Shown in pieces: positions 3,909 through 61,468 of a stretch of 64,000 bases of DNA (the stretch's first letter is position 1; each line of letters opens with the position of its first letter). The notes beneath the pieces are model-generated. The model searched no databases. It saw only the letters and a program-made list of their open reading frames with translations, and was not told the origin of the DNA. Location of the stretch: positions 62,001 to 126,000 of IMG/VR virus record IMGVR_UViG_3300046171_000252; one strand, given 5' to 3'. A program made the position numbers and the translations under genes.

Positions 3909-5819
3909 ATGCCTTTTACTAAGTATACAAATCTAGATTTTGATCAGATAAAAACATCCATCAAGGATTATCTTCGTGCAAATTCAACTTTCACCGATTT
4001 TGATTTTGAGGGATCTAACTTTTCTGTCTTAATAGACACTCTAGCATATAACACATATATCACAGCATTCAACTCAAATATGATTGTGAATGAATCCTTT
4101 TTGGATTCTGCCACTCTCAGAGAGAATGTTGTTTCATTAGCAAGAAATATTGGTTATGTACCCCGCTCTAGAACCTCTGCAAGGGCACAAATATCATTTT
4201 CAATACAAAGACCCGATGGAGATTCATCTGCTCAGGTGACGCTTCAGAGAGGTCTTGTATGCACAGGTACTTCTGCTAATACTTCATACGTATTTTCAAT
4301 ACCTGAGGACCTCACTAGAGGTTTTGTTAATGGAGTTGCGACATTTGATAATATTGAAATTTATGAAGGCACATATTTAACCAAACAATTCTTATATGAT
4401 GGTTCTCTCGATCAAAAATTTATCATTGATAATTCATTTGTCGATACCTCTACTTTAAAAGTTTATATCAAAAAAGAAAATGATATAGGAATTGGGATCG
4501 AATACTCTTTAGTTGATAATATCGTTAATGTAACTCCAAGTTCTCAGATTTATCTTCTTCAAGAGATACAAGATGAAAAATATCAATTGCTTTTTGGTGA
4601 TGGATTAATAGGAAAAAAACTTGGAACCGATCAAAATTCCGATGGTAATATAATTGTTGCCAATTATATCATATCAAATGGGATTGAAGGTAATGGAGTA
4701 TCTAATTTCTCCATGGCTGGAAGTTTTTTGACATCAGAAAATAACAATATCAATCCATCTAATATAACAATCACGTTAAATCGTGCATCTCAGAATGGAT
4801 CTGAAATTGAATCTGTTGATTCAGTTAGATATTACGCTCCAAAGATATATTCTGCACAATCTAGAGCAGTAACGGGTCGTGATTATGAGGCAATTATTAA
4901 GAGCATTTATCCAGATACAGAATCTGTTGCCGTGGTTGGTGGAGAAGAGATGGTTCCTCCACAATTTGGTACTGTAAATATCAGCATTAAACCAAAAAAT
5001 GGAACTTTTGTCTCTGATTTTAATAAATCTAGAATTTTATCACAATTAAAACAATATACTGTCTCTGGAATAAACCAAAAAATAACAGATCTTAAAATTT
5101 TATATGTTGAAATTGATTCTTCAGTTTATTATGACTATTCAAGAATATCAACTGCCGAAACTTTGAAAACAAGAGTGTTGGATACCCTTAAAACATACTC
5201 AAATTCTTTAGAAATTAACAAATTTGGAGGAAGATTTAGATATAGTAAAATTCAACAAATTATTGACAATACTAATACTTCTATAACTTCTAATATTACT
5301 AAGGTTAGGATTAGAAGAGATTTAAAAGCAATTATAAATCAATTTGCACAGTATGAATTGTGTTATGGAAATAGATTTCATATAAATTCAACTGGATATA
5401 ACATTAAATCGACAGGATTTAGAATTGCATCTGATCCTGATGTTGTTTATTTGACAGATATTCCCAATTCTGATGGAATGACAGGAATTTTGTCAATTGT
5501 AAAACCAGTTAGTAATGAATCGACAAGAGTTGTTGTAAAATCAGCAGGAACGGTTGATTATATTAAAGGCGAACTTAATATTAACACTATAAAAATTACT
5601 TCAACAGAAAAACAAAACAATATTATTGAAATTCAGGCATTTCCAGAGTCAAATGATGTGGTTGGATTGAAAGATTTGTATCTTAATTTTAACATCTCAG
5701 CAAGTTCAATAAATATGGTGAAGGATGTTATTTCATCAGGAGACGAAATATCGGGAACGGTATTTAATAGAGACTATTACACATCAAGTTACTTAAACGG
5801 GAATTTAATAAGAGAGTAG
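3909..5819 (+). CDS. gp6: Baseplate wedge subunit gp6
   Basis: LDFDQIK..DFDFEGS..LAYNTY..NESFLDSATLRENVVSLA; RAVTGRDY. Confidence 0.92.
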   Translation: MPFTKYTNLDFDQIKTSIKDYLRANSTFTDFDFEGSNFSVLIDTLAYNTYITAFNSNMIVNESFLDSATLRENVVSLARNIGYVPRSRTSARAQISFSIQRPDGDSSAQVTLQRGLVCTGTSANTSYVFSIPEDLTRGFVNGVATFDNIEIYEGTYLTKQFLYDGSLDQKFIIDNSFVDTSTLKVYIKKENDIGIGIEYSLVDNIVNVTPSSQIYLLQEIQDEKYQLLFGDGLIGKKLGTDQNSDGNIIVANYIISNGIEGNGVSNFSMAGSFLTSENNNINPSNITITLNRASQNGSEIESVDSVRYYAPKIYSAQSRAVTGRDYEAIIKSIYPDTESVAVVGGEEMVPPQFGTVNISIKPKNGTFVSDFNKSRILSQLKQYTVSGINQKITDLKILYVEIDSSVYYDYSRISTAETLKTRVLDTLKTYSNSLEINKFGGRFRYSKIQQIIDNTNTSITSNITKVRIRRDLKAIINQFAQYELCYGNRFHINSTGYNIKSTGFRIASDPDVVYLTDIPNSDGMTGILSIVKPVSNESTRVVVKSAGTVDYIKGELNINTIKITSTEKQNNIIEIQAFPESNDVVGLKDLYLNFNISASSINMVKDVISSGDEISGTVFNRDYYTSSYLNGNLIRE

Positions 5820-53765: not shown

Positions 53766-54857
53766 ATGTCTCTGACCACCGACTACATTCGTACTTCTCT
53801 TCAAAATTTGTATGGTGAGTCTGTAACCTCTGCCGACATTCGTGCATGGTGTATGATGAATGATTCTAATTATCAAACTGTAACCAAAAAACTTTCTGAG
53901 TGTAAAGTTGGTCGTGGTAAATGGAATCTTGAATTGACAAAAGAAACCGTGGATGAATTGGAAGTATCTTACAGTTCTCCTGCAGCATTGCCTGCCATTG
54001 AACAAAACCTTATTCCTCGGAAAGATGATACTTTCGTCCAGTTTGGTAACTTTAGTGATATTAAAAAAATTATTCAGTCCAATCTTTTTTATCCGACATT
54101 TATTACTGGACTCTCCGGTAATGGTAAAACTCTTTCGGTGGAGCAAGCATGTGCCCAAACAAAACGAGAACTTATCCGCGTAAACATTACTATTGAAACA
54201 GATGAAGATGATCTTATTGGCGGTTTCCGCCTTGTTAATGGTGCAACCGTCTGGCACAATGGCCCGGTCATTGAAGCACTCCAGCGAGGAGCTATCCTGC
54301 TCCTTGACGAGATCGACCTTGCCTCTAATAAAATTCTCTGTCTCCAGTCTATCCTTGAAGGAAATGGAGTCTTTCTCAAGAAAATTGGGCAGTTTGTCCG
54401 TCCCAATGCAGGTTTCAACGTCATCGCAACCGCAAACACTAAAGGTAAAGGTTCAGACGATGGACGATTCATTGGAACTAACGTGCTCAATGAAGCCTTC
54501 CTTGAGCGATTCCCTGTGACTTTTGAGCAGGAGTATCCTACTCCTTCTAATGAGGTAAAGATTCTTTTGGGTGTTGCTGCCTCTGTTGGTAAACACGATG
54601 AAGACTTCTGTAGGAGACTCGTAGATTGGGCTGACATTATCCGCAAGACCTTCTATGATGGTGGTATTGAAGAAATTATCAGCACTCGTAGATTGGTTCA
54701 CATTATCCATGCATATTCAATCTTCGGTAAGAAGGAAAAAGCAATTCAAGTTTGTGTAAATCGTTTTGATGATGAAACCAAACAGGCATTCCTAGAATTG
54801 TATGATAAAGTGGATGCGGATTTCCAAATGCCAATTGACGATCAGGAGATTACCTGA
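53766..54857 (+). CDS. cobS: CobS-like MoxR AAA+ ATPase
   Basis: GLSGNGKT, LLLDEID, TANTKGKG, NEAFLERF, ISTRRL. Confidence 0.88.
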   Translation: MSLTTDYIRTSLQNLYGESVTSADIRAWCMMNDSNYQTVTKKLSECKVGRGKWNLELTKETVDELEVSYSSPAALPAIEQNLIPRKDDTFVQFGNFSDIKKIIQSNLFYPTFITGLSGNGKTLSVEQACAQTKRELIRVNITIETDEDDLIGGFRLVNGATVWHNGPVIEALQRGAILLLDEIDLASNKILCLQSILEGNGVFLKKIGQFVRPNAGFNVIATANTKGKGSDDGRFIGTNVLNEAFLERFPVTFEQEYPTPSNEVKILLGVAASVGKHDEDFCRRLVDWADIIRKTFYDGGIEEIISTRRLVHIIHAYSIFGKKEKAIQVCVNRFDDETKQAFLELYDKVDADFQMPIDDQEIT

Positions 54858-54863
54858 TATAAT
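54835..54863 (+). promoter_or_regulatory. sigma70 promoter TTGACG-N17-TATAAT
   Basis: Near-consensus; heads the clamp operon. Confidence 0.75.
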
Positions 54864-56845: not shown

Positions 56846-57057
56846 CTAAAGTTGATGTCCCAATGAGAATAACTGGTAGTATCCTGGTGATTACTGCTTA
56901 TTTTGTTGTTCTTCACATTAATATAACTCTCGGAGTTTTTTTGCACTTTGTTGCTGATATGATTTCAGTTCCTTACTTTATAAGGACAAAATCTTGGGAT
57001 GTTGTTATTATGCTAGGATTCCTTCTAGCGATTAGTTTTAGTAAATTACTTTTTTGA
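56842..57057 (+). CDS. Small membrane protein
   Basis: 71 aa, mostly hydrophobic; overlaps both neighbours. Confidence 0.6.
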   Translation: MTKVDVPMRITGSILVITAYFVVLHINITLGVFLHFVADMISVPYFIRTKSWDVVIMLGFLLAISFSKLLF

Positions 57058-57059
57058 TT

Positions 57060-58004
57060 ATGCGTAATGAATTCCTTTGGGTTGAAAAATACCGACCCAA
57101 AACAATTGAAGAATGTATTCTACCTGAGAATACCAAAGAAACATTTCAAAAGTTCCTAGATAAAGGTGAGATACCTAATATGCTTCTCGCAGGTCCTGCG
57201 GGGTGTGGCAAAACAACGGTAGCAAAGGCACTGTGCAATCAACTGGGAGTAGACTATTATGTCATCAATGGATCGGATGAGGGACGCTTCCTTGATACTG
57301 TCAGAAACAATGCGAAAAACTTTGCTTCGACCGTATCACTTCAAGCAACTGCAAAACACAAAGTCATCATCATTGATGAGGCAGATAACACAACGAACGA
57401 CGTACAACTCCTCTTACGGGCGTTTATTGAGGAGTTTAGTAGTAATTGCAGGTTCATCTTTACATGTAACTTTAAAAACCGAATTGTCGAACCACTCCAC
57501 TCAAGATGTGCCGTCGTTGAATTTGGAATCAAAGGAAAAGATAGACAAACAATTGCTGCTCAGTTCTTCAAAAGAATCCAAGAAATCTTGGGTGCAGAAG
57601 GTGTTGAATATGATAACAAGGTCCTGGTAGAATTAATCAACAAGCACTTCCCTGATTGGCGTCGTGTCTTGAATGAGTGCCAGCGTTACTCTGTAAGTGG
57701 AAAGATTGATGCTGGTATCCTTGCTACTTTTTCTGATGTTGCCGTAAATGATCTCCTCAAAAATCTCAAAGAAAAAAACTTCCCGGAAGTTCGGAAGTGG
57801 GTGGTATCTAACATGGATAATGATACTACTGTACTTTTGCGTCGTATTTACGATGCTCTTTATGTTTCCCTTGAAAACAATAGCGTTCCTGCTGCTGTGC
57901 TCGTTCTTGCTAAGTATCAGTATCAGTCGGCATTCGTCGCGGACCAGGAGATAAACATGTTGGCATGTCTAACTGAGATTATGGTGGAGTGTGAATTCAA
58001 ATGA
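57060..58004 (+). CDS. gp44: Clamp loader large subunit gp44
   Basis: LWVEKYRP, GPAGCGKTT, IIDEAD, SRC, FPDWRR. Confidence 0.96.
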   Translation: MRNEFLWVEKYRPKTIEECILPENTKETFQKFLDKGEIPNMLLAGPAGCGKTTVAKALCNQLGVDYYVINGSDEGRFLDTVRNNAKNFASTVSLQATAKHKVIIIDEADNTTNDVQLLLRAFIEEFSSNCRFIFTCNFKNRIVEPLHSRCAVVEFGIKGKDRQTIAAQFFKRIQEILGAEGVEYDNKVLVELINKHFPDWRRVLNECQRYSVSGKIDAGILATFSDVAVNDLLKNLKEKNFPEVRKWVVSNMDNDTTVLLRRIYDALYVSLENNSVPAAVLVLAKYQYQSAFVADQEINMLACLTEIMVECEFK

Positions 58005-58417: not shown

Positions 58418-58609
58418 ATGAAACAAAAGAAAAGGTGTCAGATTAAGTCCAAGTTCTACTATATCTTTTGGGGAACCGCTACAGTAGCAGTTGTTCTGGG
58501 ACAACTATATGTTGGAACTGGATATCGTGTCTTGCATGATGATATGCAACAATTACTGAATAAGGTTGATGGAGTTCTTCTTCGTGCGGATGAACCGAAC
58601 TACCTATGA
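58418..58609 (+). CDS. Small single-TM hypothetical protein
   Basis: Basic N-terminus, hydrophobic segment FYYIFWGTATVAVVLGQLYV. Confidence 0.6.
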   Translation: MKQKKRCQIKSKFYYIFWGTATVAVVLGQLYVGTGYRVLHDDMQQLLNKVDGVLLRADEPNYL

Positions 58610-58842
58610 GTTTTTTAAAAACTGACAAGAGTAATTTAGTTGAACCAAAGGTAAAAACTACTCCTCAAAATGTGGCAGAATCAAACGATAGTTTATTTCG
58701 TGCTACAATGAATTTACCTAATGCCGCAAAGCATTGTGGTATGACCGAGAAGGAAATGAAACTAACCTTCTGGGAATATTTGAAATATAACAAACCTGAT
58801 TATGAAATCTCTCAAGACTCCCCTCAGGTATCCAGGGGGTAA
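58606..58842 (+). CDS. Hypothetical protein, possible HTH
   Basis: MNLPNAAKHCGMTEKEMK resembles an HTH. Confidence 0.55.
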   Translation: MSFLKTDKSNLVEPKVKTTPQNVAESNDSLFRATMNLPNAAKHCGMTEKEMKLTFWEYLKYNKPDYEISQDSPQVSRG

Positions 58843-59698
58843 ATCCCGTGCCTGTGTTAAGATGGATGAGTTTATTCCCGATCTAAGGGAGTATAATAAT
58901 TACCATGAACCATTTCTTGGTGGTGGTAGTGTTGCCATTCATATTACAAAAAAATATCCACACTTAGATATCTGGGTAAATGATTTATACGAACCTCTCT
59001 ATAACTTTTGGAGAGTTCTACAGGATGATGGATATGAACTTTATAAGAGACTTCAAGAATTAAAGTCTAGATATCCGGATCGTGGATCTGCCAAAGGTTT
59101 ATTTCTTGAGGCAAAAACTGTTGTAAATGATTATGATCAAACCAATCTATTTCGTGCTTGTGCTTTTTACGTTGTTAACAAGTGCTCTTTTTCTGGTCTC
59201 ACTGAGTCCTCATCCTTTAGTGCCCAAGCATCTGATTCAAACTTCTCAATGCGAGGCATAGAAAAACTACAAGGATATACAAAAATAATTAAAGATTGGA
59301 AAATTACTAATCTTAGTTATGAACAACTCCTCACTGATGATAAGGAGTGCTTTACTTATCTTGATCCTCCATACGATATTAAAAGTAATCTTTATGGAAA
59401 AAAGGGAAGTATGCATAACAAATTCAATCACGATGATTTTGCCACTGATTGTGATAGATTTATTGGACCTCAACTCATATCTTATAATTCATCTCAATTA
59501 GTCAAAGATCGTTTTCAAGGATGGGAAGTGGGAGAGTTTGATCTCACCTATACGATGAGGTCTGTGGGTGAGTATATGCGTGAGCAAAAAGATAGAAAAG
59601 AACTTCTTCTCATGAACTATGATAAGAGGTCAAAAATAAAACCTGTATTTGAAGAGTGTTATAATTTCTCCAAGTTGAAGAAAGAGGGGTTGGTATGA
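58802..59698 (+). CDS. dam: N6-adenine DNA methyltransferase (D12/Dam class)
   Basis: RYPGGKS, EPFLGGGSV, VND, YLDPPY. Confidence 0.9.
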   Translation: MKSLKTPLRYPGGKSRACVKMDEFIPDLREYNNYHEPFLGGGSVAIHITKKYPHLDIWVNDLYEPLYNFWRVLQDDGYELYKRLQELKSRYPDRGSAKGLFLEAKTVVNDYDQTNLFRACAFYVVNKCSFSGLTESSSFSAQASDSNFSMRGIEKLQGYTKIIKDWKITNLSYEQLLTDDKECFTYLDPPYDIKSNLYGKKGSMHNKFNHDDFATDCDRFIGPQLISYNSSQLVKDRFQGWEVGEFDLTYTMRSVGEYMREQKDRKELLLMNYDKRSKIKPVFEECYNFSKLKKEGLV

Positions 59699-60621
59699 GT
59701 AAATCAATACGGGAAAAATTAGATAATCTTCGCCAAAGAAAAAATAAAGACTATCAAAATATTGTTTATTACTCATACAAAATGAGTGTTCATAAACACA
59801 TCAATGATCATGAATTAAAACGTTTGAAACATAGCATTAAATCATTGAGAGAATTTAACAATGAGATATGTGTTTATTTGTTCTGTGATGATAATAATTT
59901 TATCTCACCAGATTTTTGCTCAAACTATGATGTAAATTTTAGATCTTTTGTGGATGGATTTGACCATGATATGTTGAGTGCCTGGTCAATTCACAGATGG
60001 TATAATCTTAAATACTTTGAAGGTAGATCCTGCAATATTCTTTATCTTGATTCTGATACTATTTTTTATGATGACCCTCAGTATCTTTTTGACACCTATT
60101 GTCATCGTGATGTCTATGGTAGAGAAGAGTTTGGATTCCGACATGACCCCAATACAGGTGGCGGCAGGGGCATCAGAGAGTCCTTAGATAAGGTAGATGC
60201 TGCCATTTATGATCTAGGGGGTAAGCGTGAGGTTTATAAGTATTGCCTAGGTGTGATATTGATGAATAATAATTTTCACGATCAAATCATTGACCGCCTT
60301 GATGAACTGACTAAACTGATGCAACTCTTTAAATTTAGTGAAGAGTTGATGCCAATTCCAAATCCACGAATTGTTGATCAGTATGCTGTATGGATTATCT
60401 TTAGTCGCCTTGAATTGGTTGGTGATATGTTTGCCACTCAAGATGTGACTATGGGATTCAAGGAACAAAAGCACGAAGAATTTTTTAATCCTGTCGTTCT
60501 TCATTACACAACAAAAGGTGAGCAGGGACTTGCCGAGTCTGACGAGAAGTATGCTAATCTTATTAGAGATACTGACGAGTTAGGCGCAGAAATAGACCCT
60601 TATAGTATGATGTTATCATGA
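59695..60621 (+). CDS. GT8-like GT-A glycosyltransferase
   Basis: SIKSL, ILYLDSDT (DxD), GVILMN, VDQ and LHY motifs in GT8 order. Confidence 0.65.
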   Translation: MSKSIREKLDNLRQRKNKDYQNIVYYSYKMSVHKHINDHELKRLKHSIKSLREFNNEICVYLFCDDNNFISPDFCSNYDVNFRSFVDGFDHDMLSAWSIHRWYNLKYFEGRSCNILYLDSDTIFYDDPQYLFDTYCHRDVYGREEFGFRHDPNTGGGRGIRESLDKVDAAIYDLGGKREVYKYCLGVILMNNNFHDQIIDRLDELTKLMQLFKFSEELMPIPNPRIVDQYAVWIIFSRLELVGDMFATQDVTMGFKEQKHEEFFNPVVLHYTTKGEQGLAESDEKYANLIRDTDELGAEIDPYSMMLS

Positions 60622-61001
60622 CCGAATTAAAAGACTGGCTCAACTCTATCAATCAAACAAAGAAGCATTTGATTGATGAAGACCCCTTGGTTGAAAAAGA
60701 ATATCCTCCTTATATTATCAACCGTTGTTTCTCCGGACATCTTGATGCAATTATGTTTGCAAACGAGATGAACAAGTATCATTTTCTTCCAAAGAAGATG
60801 CAGTATGATTTTATGCTAAATAGTCTGAGGAAAAAGAAGAGATTTTCTCCCTGGCTCCGAAAAGATAAAATCAAAGATCTTGATTATGTCAAACGTTATT
60901 ATGACTATAGTAATGAAAAGGCACAACATGCTTTGAAGATCCTAACAACAGAACAACTTAATTTTATTAAATCAAAATTTGATACTGGAGGAACAAGATG
61001 A
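60618..61001 (+). CDS. gp62: Clamp loader small subunit gp62
   Basis: YPPYIINRCFS, ANEMN, RKKKRFSPW. Confidence 0.92.
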   Translation: MTELKDWLNSINQTKKHLIDEDPLVEKEYPPYIINRCFSGHLDAIMFANEMNKYHFLPKKMQYDFMLNSLRKKKRFSPWLRKDKIKDLDYVKRYYDYSNEKAQHALKILTTEQLNFIKSKFDTGGTR

Positions 61002-61438
61002 GTGTGGTTCAAGAACCTATTGTGAAATGGTCGCCGGAGCAGATGGTTGAAGTGGTTCTTGGAGAACCTGATGACTTTCTCAAAGTAAGAGAAACACTAA
61101 CAAGAATTGGTGTTGCATCAAGAAAAGAAAAGAAGATTTATCAATCTTGTCATATTCTTCATAAACAAGGTCGTTATTATCTTGTGCATTTTAAAGAACT
61201 CTTTGCACTAGATGGTAAACATGCCAATATCACAGTTAATGATGTCCAACGACGTAATCGCATTGCTCAATTACTTGCTGATTGGGGTCTTATTAGCATC
61301 GTTAGTGCTGATAAAATACAAGATATTGCTCCATTGAATCAGATTAAGGTTCTTTCTTATAAAGATAAGCAAGACTGGATTCTTGAAACTAAGTATAATA
61401 TTGGGTCCAAAAAGAAAAAGGTTGAAGAAACCGAATAA
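60998..61438 (+). CDS. regA: Translational repressor RegA
   Basis: DDFLKVRETLTRIG, YQSCHILHKQGRYYLVHFKELF. Confidence 0.96.
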   Translation: MSVVQEPIVKWSPEQMVEVVLGEPDDFLKVRETLTRIGVASRKEKKIYQSCHILHKQGRYYLVHFKELFALDGKHANITVNDVQRRNRIAQLLADWGLISIVSADKIQDIAPLNQIKVLSYKDKQDWILETKYNIGSKKKKVEETE

Positions 61439-61445
61439 AAATCTA

Positions 61446-61468
61446 CGGGGTTCCTACCCCGCTTTTTT
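61446..61468 (+). terminator. Intrinsic terminator after regA
   Basis: cggggt-tcct-accccg followed by ctttttt. Confidence 0.8.

What the first reader, a model, noticed from the sequence alone, without database searches (positions are those of the whole stretch)
58802..60621. Dam translationally coupled to a GT8-like glycosyltransferase inside the replisome operon: candidate DNA hypermodification pair
Seen: dam/GT and GT/gp62 both overlap by ATGA, and Dam has about 25 extra residues after the usual ELL..NY end. Established: phages glycosylate DNA bases to evade restriction, usually on 5-hydroxymethyl-pyrimidines made by a hydroxymethylase or a TET/JBP enzyme. No such enzyme is in this window and the methylase is adenine-specific. 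Inference: an unusual DNA-modifying GT or a surface-glycan enzyme that landed here by chance.
Basis: inference. Interest (0 to 1): 0.6.

Follow-up and report, generated by a model that had tools for sequence, protein, structure and literature searches.

The report
Cyanophage GT8-like sugar transferase beside Dam
A marine cyanophage carries a divergent GT8-type sugar-transferring enzyme between its Dam DNA methylase and a clamp-loader gene, but the pairing is best explained by both genes sharing a known insertion hot spot, not by a joint DNA-modification pathway.

Summary
Dam (58802-59698), a 308-aa ORF (59695-60621) and gp62 (60618-61001) overlap by ATGA, and Dam has 25 residues after its ...LLLMNY end.

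The 308-aa ORF is a retaining GT-A, GT8-like glycosyltransferase with a DxD motif at D119/D121. Its fold matches LgtC, LARGE1, UGGT and glycogenin at Z 15-16. It belongs to a family seen only in uncultured marine phages.

The "hypermodification pair" reading is not supported:
- ATGA overlaps are the norm in this operon (8 of 14 junctions).
- Dam normally sits directly against gp62 in cultured cyanophages, which lack the GT.
- The Dam-gp62 junction is a hot spot that holds unrelated cargo in other contigs.
- The GT persists in lineages where Dam is replaced by a DruA-like gene or by nothing.
- The Dam tail occurs just as often without the GT.
- The genome has no ThyA-type hydroxymethylase.
- Known DNA glycosyltransferases are reported as GT-B-like, and this family is acidic (pI 4.6-6.4).

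Most likely this is a long-resident flexible gene that glycosylates a non-DNA acceptor, which remains unknown. The finding is a new member of a known kind and of modest interest. One side observation is that the Dam tail is a modular peptide motif shared with many small phage ORFs.

The parts
54835..54863 (+). Sigma-70-like promoter consensus (TTGACG-17-TATAAT with TG) ahead of the gp45...regA gene block
   Evidence: 11 of 12 matches. This is a consensus scan only.
57054..58004 (+). gp44, the clamp-loader large subunit and left border of the variable slot
   Evidence: PF21328, PF00004, phrog_168 E 1e-137.
58606..58842 (+). Small conserved ORF (phrog_1920) that overlaps the Dam start by 41 nt
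58802..59698 (+). Dam, a D12-class N6-adenine DNA methyltransferase of 298 aa
   Evidence: PF02086 E 7e-30, phrog_56, TIGR00571. DPPY at residue 188 and FLGGG at residue 38. AF2 model has mean pLDDT 81.
59621..59695 (+). Dam C-terminal tail (residues 274-298) carrying the motif PK[IV]KxxF[DE]GCYN[YF]x[KR]LKKEGL
   Evidence: The motif is conserved at the peptide level, predicted disordered, and found with and without the GT and in free-standing small ORFs.
59695..59698 (+). ATGA overlap of the Dam stop with the GT start; the SD-like GAGGGG lies a few bases upstream
59695..60621 (+). GT8-like retaining GT-A glycosyltransferase of 308 aa from a phage-only family
60049..60057 (+). Codons of the DxD motif (D119-S-D121, in LYLDSDT), the predicted binding site for metal and UDP-sugar
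   Evidence: Invariant in 20 of 20 family members. Aligns with the DxD of the GT8 enzyme Gat1, 6mw5, and of GlyE.
60502..60504 (+). Codon of invariant H270 (in VLHYTT), a candidate third metal ligand as in GT8 enzymes
   Evidence: One search shows invariance. Its role is inferred and was not checked in the model.
60618..60621 (+). ATGA overlap of the GT stop with the gp62 start
60618..61001 (+). gp62, the clamp-loader small subunit and right border of the slot
   Evidence: PF16790, phrog_225 E 2e-48.
60998..61438 (+). regA translational repressor, the last gene of the block
   Evidence: PF01818 E 2e-45.
61446..61461 (.). Terminator-like GC hairpin with T runs on both strands
   Evidence: This is a consensus scan only.

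Best explanation
The window comes from a T4-like marine cyanomyovirus whose nearest cultured relative is S-SKS1. ORF 59695-60621 encodes a divergent GT8-like glycosyltransferase restricted to phages. It has the GT-A fold and a DxD motif, so it is most likely a metal-dependent, UDP-sugar-using, retaining enzyme. It is a long-resident flexible gene at the gp62 end of the hypervariable gp44-gp62 slot. It is read with the replisome genes because every gene in that block is packed end to end.

Dam is an ordinary orphan adenine methylase (Dam-family; GATC specificity not tested), and its usual position in cyanomyoviruses is exactly here, against gp62. The GT therefore sits next to Dam through shared synteny, not shared chemistry.

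Shown: the fold, the motifs, the family's distribution, the gene orders, and the lack of a hydroxymethylase. Inferred: the donor and the acceptor.

My committed guess is that the enzyme transfers a hexose to a soluble, non-DNA acceptor in the infected cell. My rough split is protein about 0.35, envelope or polysaccharide precursor about 0.25, small molecule or glucan about 0.15, DNA about 0.07, and other for the rest.
For: Fold and homology:
- The AF2 model has pLDDT 77 and pTM 0.80.
- Foldseek gives E about 1e-8 to UGGT, alpha-1,3-GalT, LgtC and GlyE.
- VIA-align gives Z 15-16 to LARGE1, UGGT, LgtC, WbbM and glycogenin.
- 30 of the 40 nearest distant relatives hit PF01501, and their profile hits GlyE and glycogenin structures at E 1e-7 to 5e-3.

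Distribution:
- More than 400 metagenomic clusters.
- None in 50,697 phage records.
- One small MAG contig among GTDB genomes.
- The ESM Atlas neighbours are viral.

Synteny:
- In S-SKS1 and Bellamy, Dam abuts gp62 with no GT.
- 421 cyanophage records carry Dam; in many of the listed rows a clamp-loader gene lies under the match.
- Of 72 distinct GTs, Dam lies directly upstream in 41 and one small gene further up in 10. A DruA-like gene is upstream in 11, and other genes or none in 10.
- The GT tree needs at least 4 losses of Dam adjacency.

Hot spot: the same junction holds GcvP, 2OG oxygenases, an HhH-GPD-like gene, DenV, heme oxygenase, or PNP with a PRTase and a JmjC gene.

Against DNA as the acceptor:
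- No PF00303 homologue in the complete genome.
- DNA glycosyltransferases in the two papers read are described as resembling T-even 5hmC-GTs or GT-B enzymes (sucrose-phosphate synthase, BshA). They sit with a ThyA homologue plus kinase, or with a C5-methylase plus TET (PMC13326640, PMC8256090).
- The family pI is 4.6-6.4.
- GGCC, AGCT, TCGA, ACGT and GTAC are 3- to 5-fold depleted, which fits unshielded DNA.
Against: Dam lies upstream of 71% of distinct GT homologues, counting 10 with one small gene between. That is more than the 36% of cyanophages reported to carry Dam (PMC12801897). These contigs are phylogenetically related, so the enrichment cannot be tested properly. Most non-Dam contigs are 5-28% complete, so Dam could lie elsewhere in them. 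The TET/JBP search is uninformative because its control matched nothing, and the genome has four P4H-type 2OG oxygenases. The gene sits in an early/middle replication block, away from the phage's sugar island at 161-180 kb. That timing would also suit a DNA-directed enzyme. No acceptor has been shown. The pI and palindrome arguments are indirect.
Confidence: 0.62

Rival explanations
1. Dam and the GT form a post-replicative DNA hypermodification pathway. Dam makes N6-methyladenine, a phage 2OG-Fe(II) oxygenase or another step creates a hydroxyl handle such as N6-hydroxymethyladenine, and the GT glycosylates it to block restriction.
For: Dam lies directly upstream of the GT, or one small gene away, in 51 of 72 distinct homologues, and this order looks ancestral on the GT tree. 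Both genes lie in the replication gene block. The genome has four PF13640 oxygenases and its own sugar-nucleotide enzymes. A methylase + oxygenase + GT logic has precedent in phage C5-MT/TET/GT clusters (PMC8256090).
Against: The GT persists with a DruA-like gene, gp44, a cytidylyltransferase-like gene or small ORFs upstream, and no Dam in view. Tail-bearing Dam abuts gp62 without the GT in about 36 contigs, and all 421 cultured-phage Dams come without the GT. No oxygenase lies near the GT here, and the window's genome has no orthologue of the oxygenases that sit next to the GT elsewhere. The fold is GT-A, whereas phage DNA GTs in the papers read are described as GT-B-like. The protein is acidic. 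To my knowledge glycosylated adenine has not been reported in DNA.
Confidence: 0.07
2. The GT is a protein O-glycosyltransferase that works downstream of a P4H-like 2OG-Fe(II) hydroxylase, by analogy with Skp1 hydroxyproline glycosylation or collagen hydroxylysine glycosylation. It would modify a phage or host protein.
For: In the sister clade (46% identity), the GT sits beside PF13640 oxygenases in three different arrangements: L209, L218 and L222. In the cyanophage clade, L192 and L150 have an oxygenase between the GT and gp62, and L080 has a JmjC_2 gene there. Several top structural matches act on proteins or protein-linked glycans: glycogenin, GlyE, UGGT and LARGE1. The best direct PDB sequence match is the Skp1 galactosyltransferase Gat1, though it is weak at E 0.17. 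The protein is soluble and acidic, and no membrane-anchoring segment was noted in its sequence or model; no dedicated transmembrane prediction was run.
Against: 2OG oxygenases are common in these phages. In the slot they occur in 7 of 56 GT loci, from only about 3 lineages, against 1 of 26 GT-less loci, which is not convincing. None lies near the GT in this window. No target protein has been identified.
Confidence: 0.2
3. The GT remodels a host envelope glycan, such as LPS core, O-antigen or a glycolipid precursor, like other cyanophage cell-wall modification genes, to alter receptors or exclude superinfecting phages.
For: GT8 includes the LPS enzymes LgtC and WbbM, which are among the best structural matches. 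Cyanophage GTs are usually read this way (PMC12801897). The genome carries a sugar island that could supply donors.
Against: The gene lies outside that island, in the replication block. The protein is acidic with a disordered acidic C-terminus, rather than the basic membrane-binding end I recall (from memory, not checked here) for LPS-core GT8 enzymes. The family is absent from bacterial genomes.
Confidence: 0.2

Closest known systems
CAZy family GT8 / Pfam PF01501 (LgtC, glycogenin, GlyE, LARGE1 xylosyltransferase domain) and the related GT24 UGGT catalytic domain
   Same: Same retaining GT-A fold (Z 15-16). DxD motif in the same place. Invariant late His. Transitive sequence homology through intermediate relatives.
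   Different: Identity to solved structures is at most about 15-18%. The window protein scores below every Pfam threshold. The family is phage-only. It has its own conserved blocks (YGREE, QDVT, C-terminal IDPY) and an optional N-terminal helix. The acceptor is unknown.
Phage DNA glycosyltransferases (T4 alpha/beta-glucosyltransferases; RB69/DLP3 arabinosyltransferases)
   Same: Encoded by T4-like phages and likely to use UDP-sugars.
   Different: The RB69/DLP3 enzymes match GT-B structures (sucrose-phosphate synthase, BshA) and work on 5hmC or 5hoC made by a ThyA homologue, with a kinase and dCTPase nearby (PMC13326640). T4's own enzymes are GT-B from my knowledge. Here the fold is GT-A and the genome has no ThyA homologue.
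Phage C5-methyltransferase / TET / glycosyltransferase clusters
   Same: A DNA methylase gene next to a glycosyltransferase gene in a phage.
   Different: Those clusters use a cytosine-C5 methylase and a TET dioxygenase between the two steps, and GTs described as resembling T-even 5hmC-GTs (PMC8256090). Here the methylase is N6-adenine and no TET was found, although that search was uninformative.
Cyanophage cell-wall synthesis and modification glycosyltransferases (P-SSM2, S-SCSM1, S-SCSM2R)
   Same: Glycosyltransferases carried as flexible genes by marine cyanomyoviruses (PMC12801897). This genome also has such an island.
   Different: This gene lies outside the island, in the gp44-gp62 slot, and has no homologue in any cultured phage.
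Hypervariable gp44-gp62 slot of T4-like cyanophages
   Same: Variable cargo sits between conserved clamp-loader genes. S-SKS1 has PurN/PurS-like genes there and Bellamy has only Dam.
   Different: In this uncultured clade the GT is a stable, vertically inherited occupant rather than sporadic cargo.

Membership tests
GT8 glycosyltransferases (PF01501 / CAZy GT8) | GT-A nucleotide-sugar-binding fold with GT8-type topology | tested here: met
   Foldseek E 1e-8 and VIA-align Z 15-16 over 196-245 residues to LgtC, glycogenin, LARGE1, WbbM and GlyE. ESM Atlas neighbours include GT8 clusters.
GT8 glycosyltransferases (PF01501 / CAZy GT8) | DxD metal and UDP-sugar binding motif after the fourth beta-strand | tested here: met
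   D119-S-D121 is invariant in 20 family members and aligns to the DxD of Gat1. The relatives' DxD aligns to that of GlyE.
GT8 glycosyltransferases (PF01501 / CAZy GT8) | Late conserved His as third metal ligand | tested here: inconclusive
   H270 is invariant, but its position relative to the DxD was not checked in the model. The neighbouring loop has low pLDDT.
GT8 glycosyltransferases (PF01501 / CAZy GT8) | Score above the Pfam gathering threshold | tested here: not met
   The window protein has no PF01501 hit, only Mannosyl_trans3 at E 0.016. The sister-clade representative P0123 passes (26.6 against 24.3 bits), and 30 of 40 distant relatives match.
GT8 glycosyltransferases (PF01501 / CAZy GT8) | Retaining transfer from a UDP-sugar | not testable with these tools
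   Needs an enzyme assay.
T-even-type DNA glycosylation systems | ThyA-family dCMP/dUMP hydroxymethylase or 5hoC synthase in the genome | tested here: not met
   No PF00303 match in the 207.6-kb genome, which CheckV rates 100% complete. The control matched in 10 genomes.
T-even-type DNA glycosylation systems | GT-B fold DNA glycosyltransferase | tested here: not met
   The fold is GT-A. The RB69/DLP3 enzymes match GT-B structures (PMC13326640).
C5-MT / TET / GT hypermodification clusters | TET/JBP dioxygenase | tested here: inconclusive
   No PF12851 match, but the control matched nowhere either. Four PF13640 oxygenases exist, all far from the GT.
C5-MT / TET / GT hypermodification clusters | Cytosine-C5 methyltransferase as partner | tested here: not met
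   The neighbour is a D12-class N6-adenine methylase.
Dam-family (D12, alpha group) DNA adenine methyltransferases | PF02086 above threshold, with motif I FxGxG and motif IV DPPY | tested here: met
   104.9 bits against a cut-off of 22. FLGGG at residue 38 and DPPY at residue 188.
Dam-family (D12, alpha group) DNA adenine methyltransferases | GATC specificity | not testable with these tools
   GATC is at 0.92 of the mononucleotide expectation while other 4-mer palindromes are depleted. This is suggestive only.

The most novel reading that the evidence does not exclude
The GT8-like enzyme glycosylates phage DNA on an adenine-derived handle. For example, Dam-made m6A would be oxidised to N6-hydroxymethyladenine by one of the phage's 2OG-Fe(II) oxygenases and then glycosylated. 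To my knowledge that would be the first glycosylated purine hypermodification and the first GT8-type DNA glycosyltransferase in a phage.
Probability: 0.05. Interest if true: 0.9.

Novelty: new member of a known kind. Interest (0 to 1): 0.3.

Why it matters
If the ordinary reading holds, the result is mainly a caution. In T4-like phages, 4-nt overlaps and adjacency inside the gp44-gp62 slot say little about shared function. It also defines a sizeable glycosyltransferase family, restricted to phages, that no Pfam model covers and no cultured phage carries. Its acceptor is an open question about how marine cyanophages use glycosylation during early or middle infection. The small remaining chance of an adenine-based DNA glycosylation would be a new kind of DNA chemistry, and it is cheap to test by co-expression and LC-MS. 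The modular Dam-tail peptide shared with many small ORFs is a separate lead for a docking motif.

Tried and rejected
1. Dam tail as a GT-specific feature: rejected. A degenerate-pattern scan found the tail on Dams that abut gp62 directly about as often as on Dams followed by the GT. It also found the tail in small ORFs and in orf78 fusions.

2. Tail conserved as an embedded extended -10 promoter (TGTTATAAT) plus RBS: rejected. Third codon positions vary freely (TGT/TGC 80/20, TAT/TAC 83/17, and Leu and Lys codons are mixed), so the selection acts on the peptide.

3. Tail as part of a mobile GT cassette: rejected. Upstream ORFs in contexts without Dam do not end with it.

4. Complex prediction of the Dam tail (residues 255-298) with the gp45 clamp: no answer, score 0.00. 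This is evidence neither for nor against binding. Dam-GT binding was not tested because I do not claim it.

5. Conserved oxygenase partner: the window's genome has no close orthologue of the oxygenases that neighbour the GT elsewhere. Slot enrichment is weak.

6. Context of the distant representatives P0123 and P0128 by exact look-up: the contigs are too short. IMG/VR loci were used instead.

7. TET/JBP search: uninformative, because the control matched nothing.

8. Dam elsewhere in GT contigs without Dam: none was found, but those records are only 5-28% complete.

No read-mapping tools were used.
Full report
**What is there.** The window belongs to a 207,616-bp virus record rated 100% complete. 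It is a T4-like marine cyanomyovirus. The best cultured match is Synechococcus phage S-SKS1, at 86% identity over 48% of a 5-kb query. The gene order on the + strand is gp45, SpeD, gp44 (57054-58004), four small ORFs, Dam (58802-59698), a 308-aa ORF (59695-60621), gp62 (60618-61001), regA (60998-61438) and hsp20. A strong promoter-like site at 54835-54863 and a terminator-like hairpin at 61446-61461 bracket the block.

**Checking the observation.** Both ATGA overlaps are in the sequence. Dam has 25 residues after ...LLLMNY, which ends at residue 273. Dam is a standard D12-class adenine methylase: PF02086 at 105 bits, with DPPY and FLGGG motifs. The overlaps carry little information. Eight of the 14 junctions in this block overlap by exactly 4 nt. 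In related contigs the GT overlaps whatever gene lies upstream, whether Dam, a DruA-like gene, gp44 or small ORFs.

**What the 308-aa ORF is.** Pfam, NCBIfam and PHROGs give nothing above threshold. The word search found more than 400 metagenomic clusters at 59-89% identity. An alignment of 20 members shows an invariant LYxDxDT block (D119, D121), YGREE, QDVT, HYTT (H270) and a C-terminal IDPY.

An AF2 model (pLDDT 77, pTM 0.80) matches retaining GT-A enzymes. Foldseek gives E about 1e-8 to UGGT, alpha-1,3-GalT, LgtC and GlyE. VIA-align gives Z 15-16 to LARGE1, UGGT, LgtC, WbbM and glycogenin.

The exhaustive profile search found 294 representative proteins. Thirty of the 40 nearest full-length distant relatives hit PF01501. 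Their profile hits GlyE and glycogenin structures at E 1e-7 to 5e-3.

The family is essentially viral. There is no tblastn hit in 50,697 phage records. Among 185,579 GTDB genomes there is only one 5.7-kb MAG contig. The ESM Atlas neighbours are viral.

**Is Dam-GT a functional pair?**

- *Dam without the GT.* In S-SKS1 and Bellamy, Dam abuts gp62 with no GT. In all, 421 cyanophage records carry a Dam homologue. In many of the listed rows a clamp-loader gene lies under the match, and none has the GT.
- *What lies upstream of the GT.* Across IMG/VR and assembly contigs there are 72 distinct GT homologues:

| Upstream of the GT | Distinct GTs |
|---|---|
| Dam directly | 41 |
| Dam, with DUF7191 or heme oxygenase between | 10 |
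| DruA-like gene (PF14236, phrog_19197) | 11 |
| Other genes or none | 10 |

- *What lies downstream.* gp62 is directly downstream in 45 of the 72.
- *History.* On a GT tree rooted with the sister clade, Dam adjacency is spread across the basal branches. At least 4 losses are needed. Dam-GT-gp62 is therefore an old arrangement, from which Dam has dropped out several times while the GT stayed.
- *The junction is a hot spot.* A scan for the Dam tail, which is unbiased with respect to the GT, found about 36 contigs where Dam directly abuts gp62. About 22 have the GT between, and about 12 have other inserts. The other cargo includes a 916-aa glycine-cleavage P protein, 2OG oxygenases, an HhH-GPD-like protein, endonuclease V, heme oxygenase, and PNP with a PRTase and a JmjC gene.

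Adjacency thus follows from two genes sharing one slot.

**The Dam tail.** The tail carries the motif PK[IV]KxxF[DE]GCYN[YF]x[KR]LKKEGL, which is conserved across Dams only 61-88% identical to this one. None of the best-matching cultured-phage Dams listed aligns past residue 281, so they appear to lack it. It is not tied to the GT. It also occurs fused to the orf78 homologue where the Dam core is gone (L109, L120, L146). It appears as well in many free-standing ORFs of 43-84 aa with varied acidic ends.

Third codon positions vary, so the peptide rather than the DNA is under selection. AF2 predicts the tail to be disordered, with a short helix at 289-294. It looks like a short linear docking motif, and its partner is unknown.

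**DNA as the acceptor?** The complete genome has no ThyA-family hydroxymethylase. The TET/JBP search was uninformative. Four P4H-type 2OG oxygenases exist but lie 60 kb or more from the GT. None is an orthologue of the oxygenases found beside the GT elsewhere.

Phage DNA glycosyltransferases in the two papers read resemble GT-B enzymes or the T-even 5hmC-GTs. They sit with a ThyA homologue, kinase and dCTPase (PMC13326640), or with a C5-methylase and TET (PMC8256090). This enzyme is GT-A.

The whole family is acidic (pI 4.6-6.4). The genome also strongly avoids GGCC, AGCT, TCGA, ACGT and GTAC, at 0.18-0.33 of expectation. That fits DNA that is not broadly shielded. None of this is proof, so I leave about 0.07 on a DNA acceptor.

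**What it more likely does.** The enzyme is soluble and made with the replication genes. It lies about 40 kb from the phage's own sugar island, which holds epimerases/dehydratases and GT2 genes at 161-180 kb and GT1/GT2 genes at 205-206 kb.

In the 46%-identical sister clade the GT sits beside P4H-like oxygenases in three different layouts, together with radical-SAM, ClpP and FkbM genes. A few cyanophage contigs show the same pairing. The enrichment in the slot is weak, however: 7 of 56 GT loci against 1 of 26 GT-less loci, and the 7 come from about 3 lineages.

Several best structural matches act on proteins or protein-linked glycans. I therefore favour a non-DNA, soluble acceptor, with protein slightly ahead of envelope glycan. 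This is an inference.

**Verdict.** The fold call is confirmed. The "hypermodification pair" reading is not supported. The gene is a new, phage-only member of the GT8-like group and occupies a known variable slot. Interest is modest, at 0.3.

Noticed in passing
window 59621-59695; L202, L205, L103, L138, L118, L126, L109, L120, L146 (positions): The Dam tail motif (E)PK[IV]KLxF[DE][GS]CYN[YF]x[KR]LKKEGL is a modular peptide. It also heads many free-standing 43-84 aa ORFs with varied acidic C-ends, such as ...TQHPICDI...TPENDPYGGR...AYDKIPHRY and ...HTDLNNDAC. It is fused to the orf78 homologue where the Dam core is missing. Selection acts on the peptide, and the tail is predicted disordered. 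It could be a docking motif or a shared leader.
   Followed up: partly
L015:4946-6004, L076:3883-5004 and relatives (L087-L096): A 352-373 aa DruA-like protein (PF14236 E 1e-9; phrog_19197 E 1e-157 or lower) takes Dam's place directly upstream of the GT in two GT subclades, again with a 4-nt overlap. Finding the Druantia DruA domain in a phage replication block is unexplained.
   Followed up: partly
L203:2226-4976, L112:3015-5762 (-), L084:1994-4747, L088:3139-5901: A full-length glycine-cleavage P protein (GcvP, about 916 aa; PF02347 E 5e-170) is carried between Dam, or the GT, and gp62 in several uncultured cyanophage contigs. It may be an auxiliary metabolic gene.
   Followed up: no
L019:7728-10115, L021:2760-5147, L117:3516-5933, L192:6016-8406: An ORF of about 800 aa lies directly after regA in several related contigs. 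In L019 and L021 it is called as alpha-glucan phosphorylase (PF00343). The equal-sized ORFs in L117 and L192 were not scanned. It occurs with and without the GT.
   Followed up: no
L209:421-3036, L218:476-5577, L222:7004-11195: The sister clade of the GT (about 46% identity, 360-380 aa) sits next to one to three P4H-like 2OG-Fe(II) oxygenases plus radical-SAM, ClpP and FkbM-methyltransferase genes in other marine phage contigs. This could be a hydroxylation-glycosylation module.
   Followed up: partly
whole genome G000 (window = 62001-126000): The 4-mer palindromes GGCC (0.18), AGCT (0.18), TCGA (0.26), ACGT (0.30) and GTAC (0.33) are strongly depleted against the mononucleotide expectation, while GATC is at 0.92. 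This fits restriction avoidance plus Dam protection.
   Followed up: partly
genome G000:C1 about 161-180 kb and 205-206 kb (outside the window): A sugar island holds five epimerase/dehydratase hits, two or three GT2-like ORFs and a cytidylyltransferase-like ORF. A GT1 and a GT2-like ORF lie near the genome end.
   Followed up: no
L001 (S-SKS1) 4112-5132: In the nearest cultured relative, the same gp44-gp62 slot carries PurN-like and PurS-like genes instead. Its Dam belongs to a different subtype with an unrelated tail.
   Followed up: no
L051:5025-5576; L169:4688-5107 (-); L058:877-1569: Other cargo in the slot includes an endonuclease V (DenV, phrog_274), an HhH-GPD-like protein and a heme oxygenase.
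   Followed up: no
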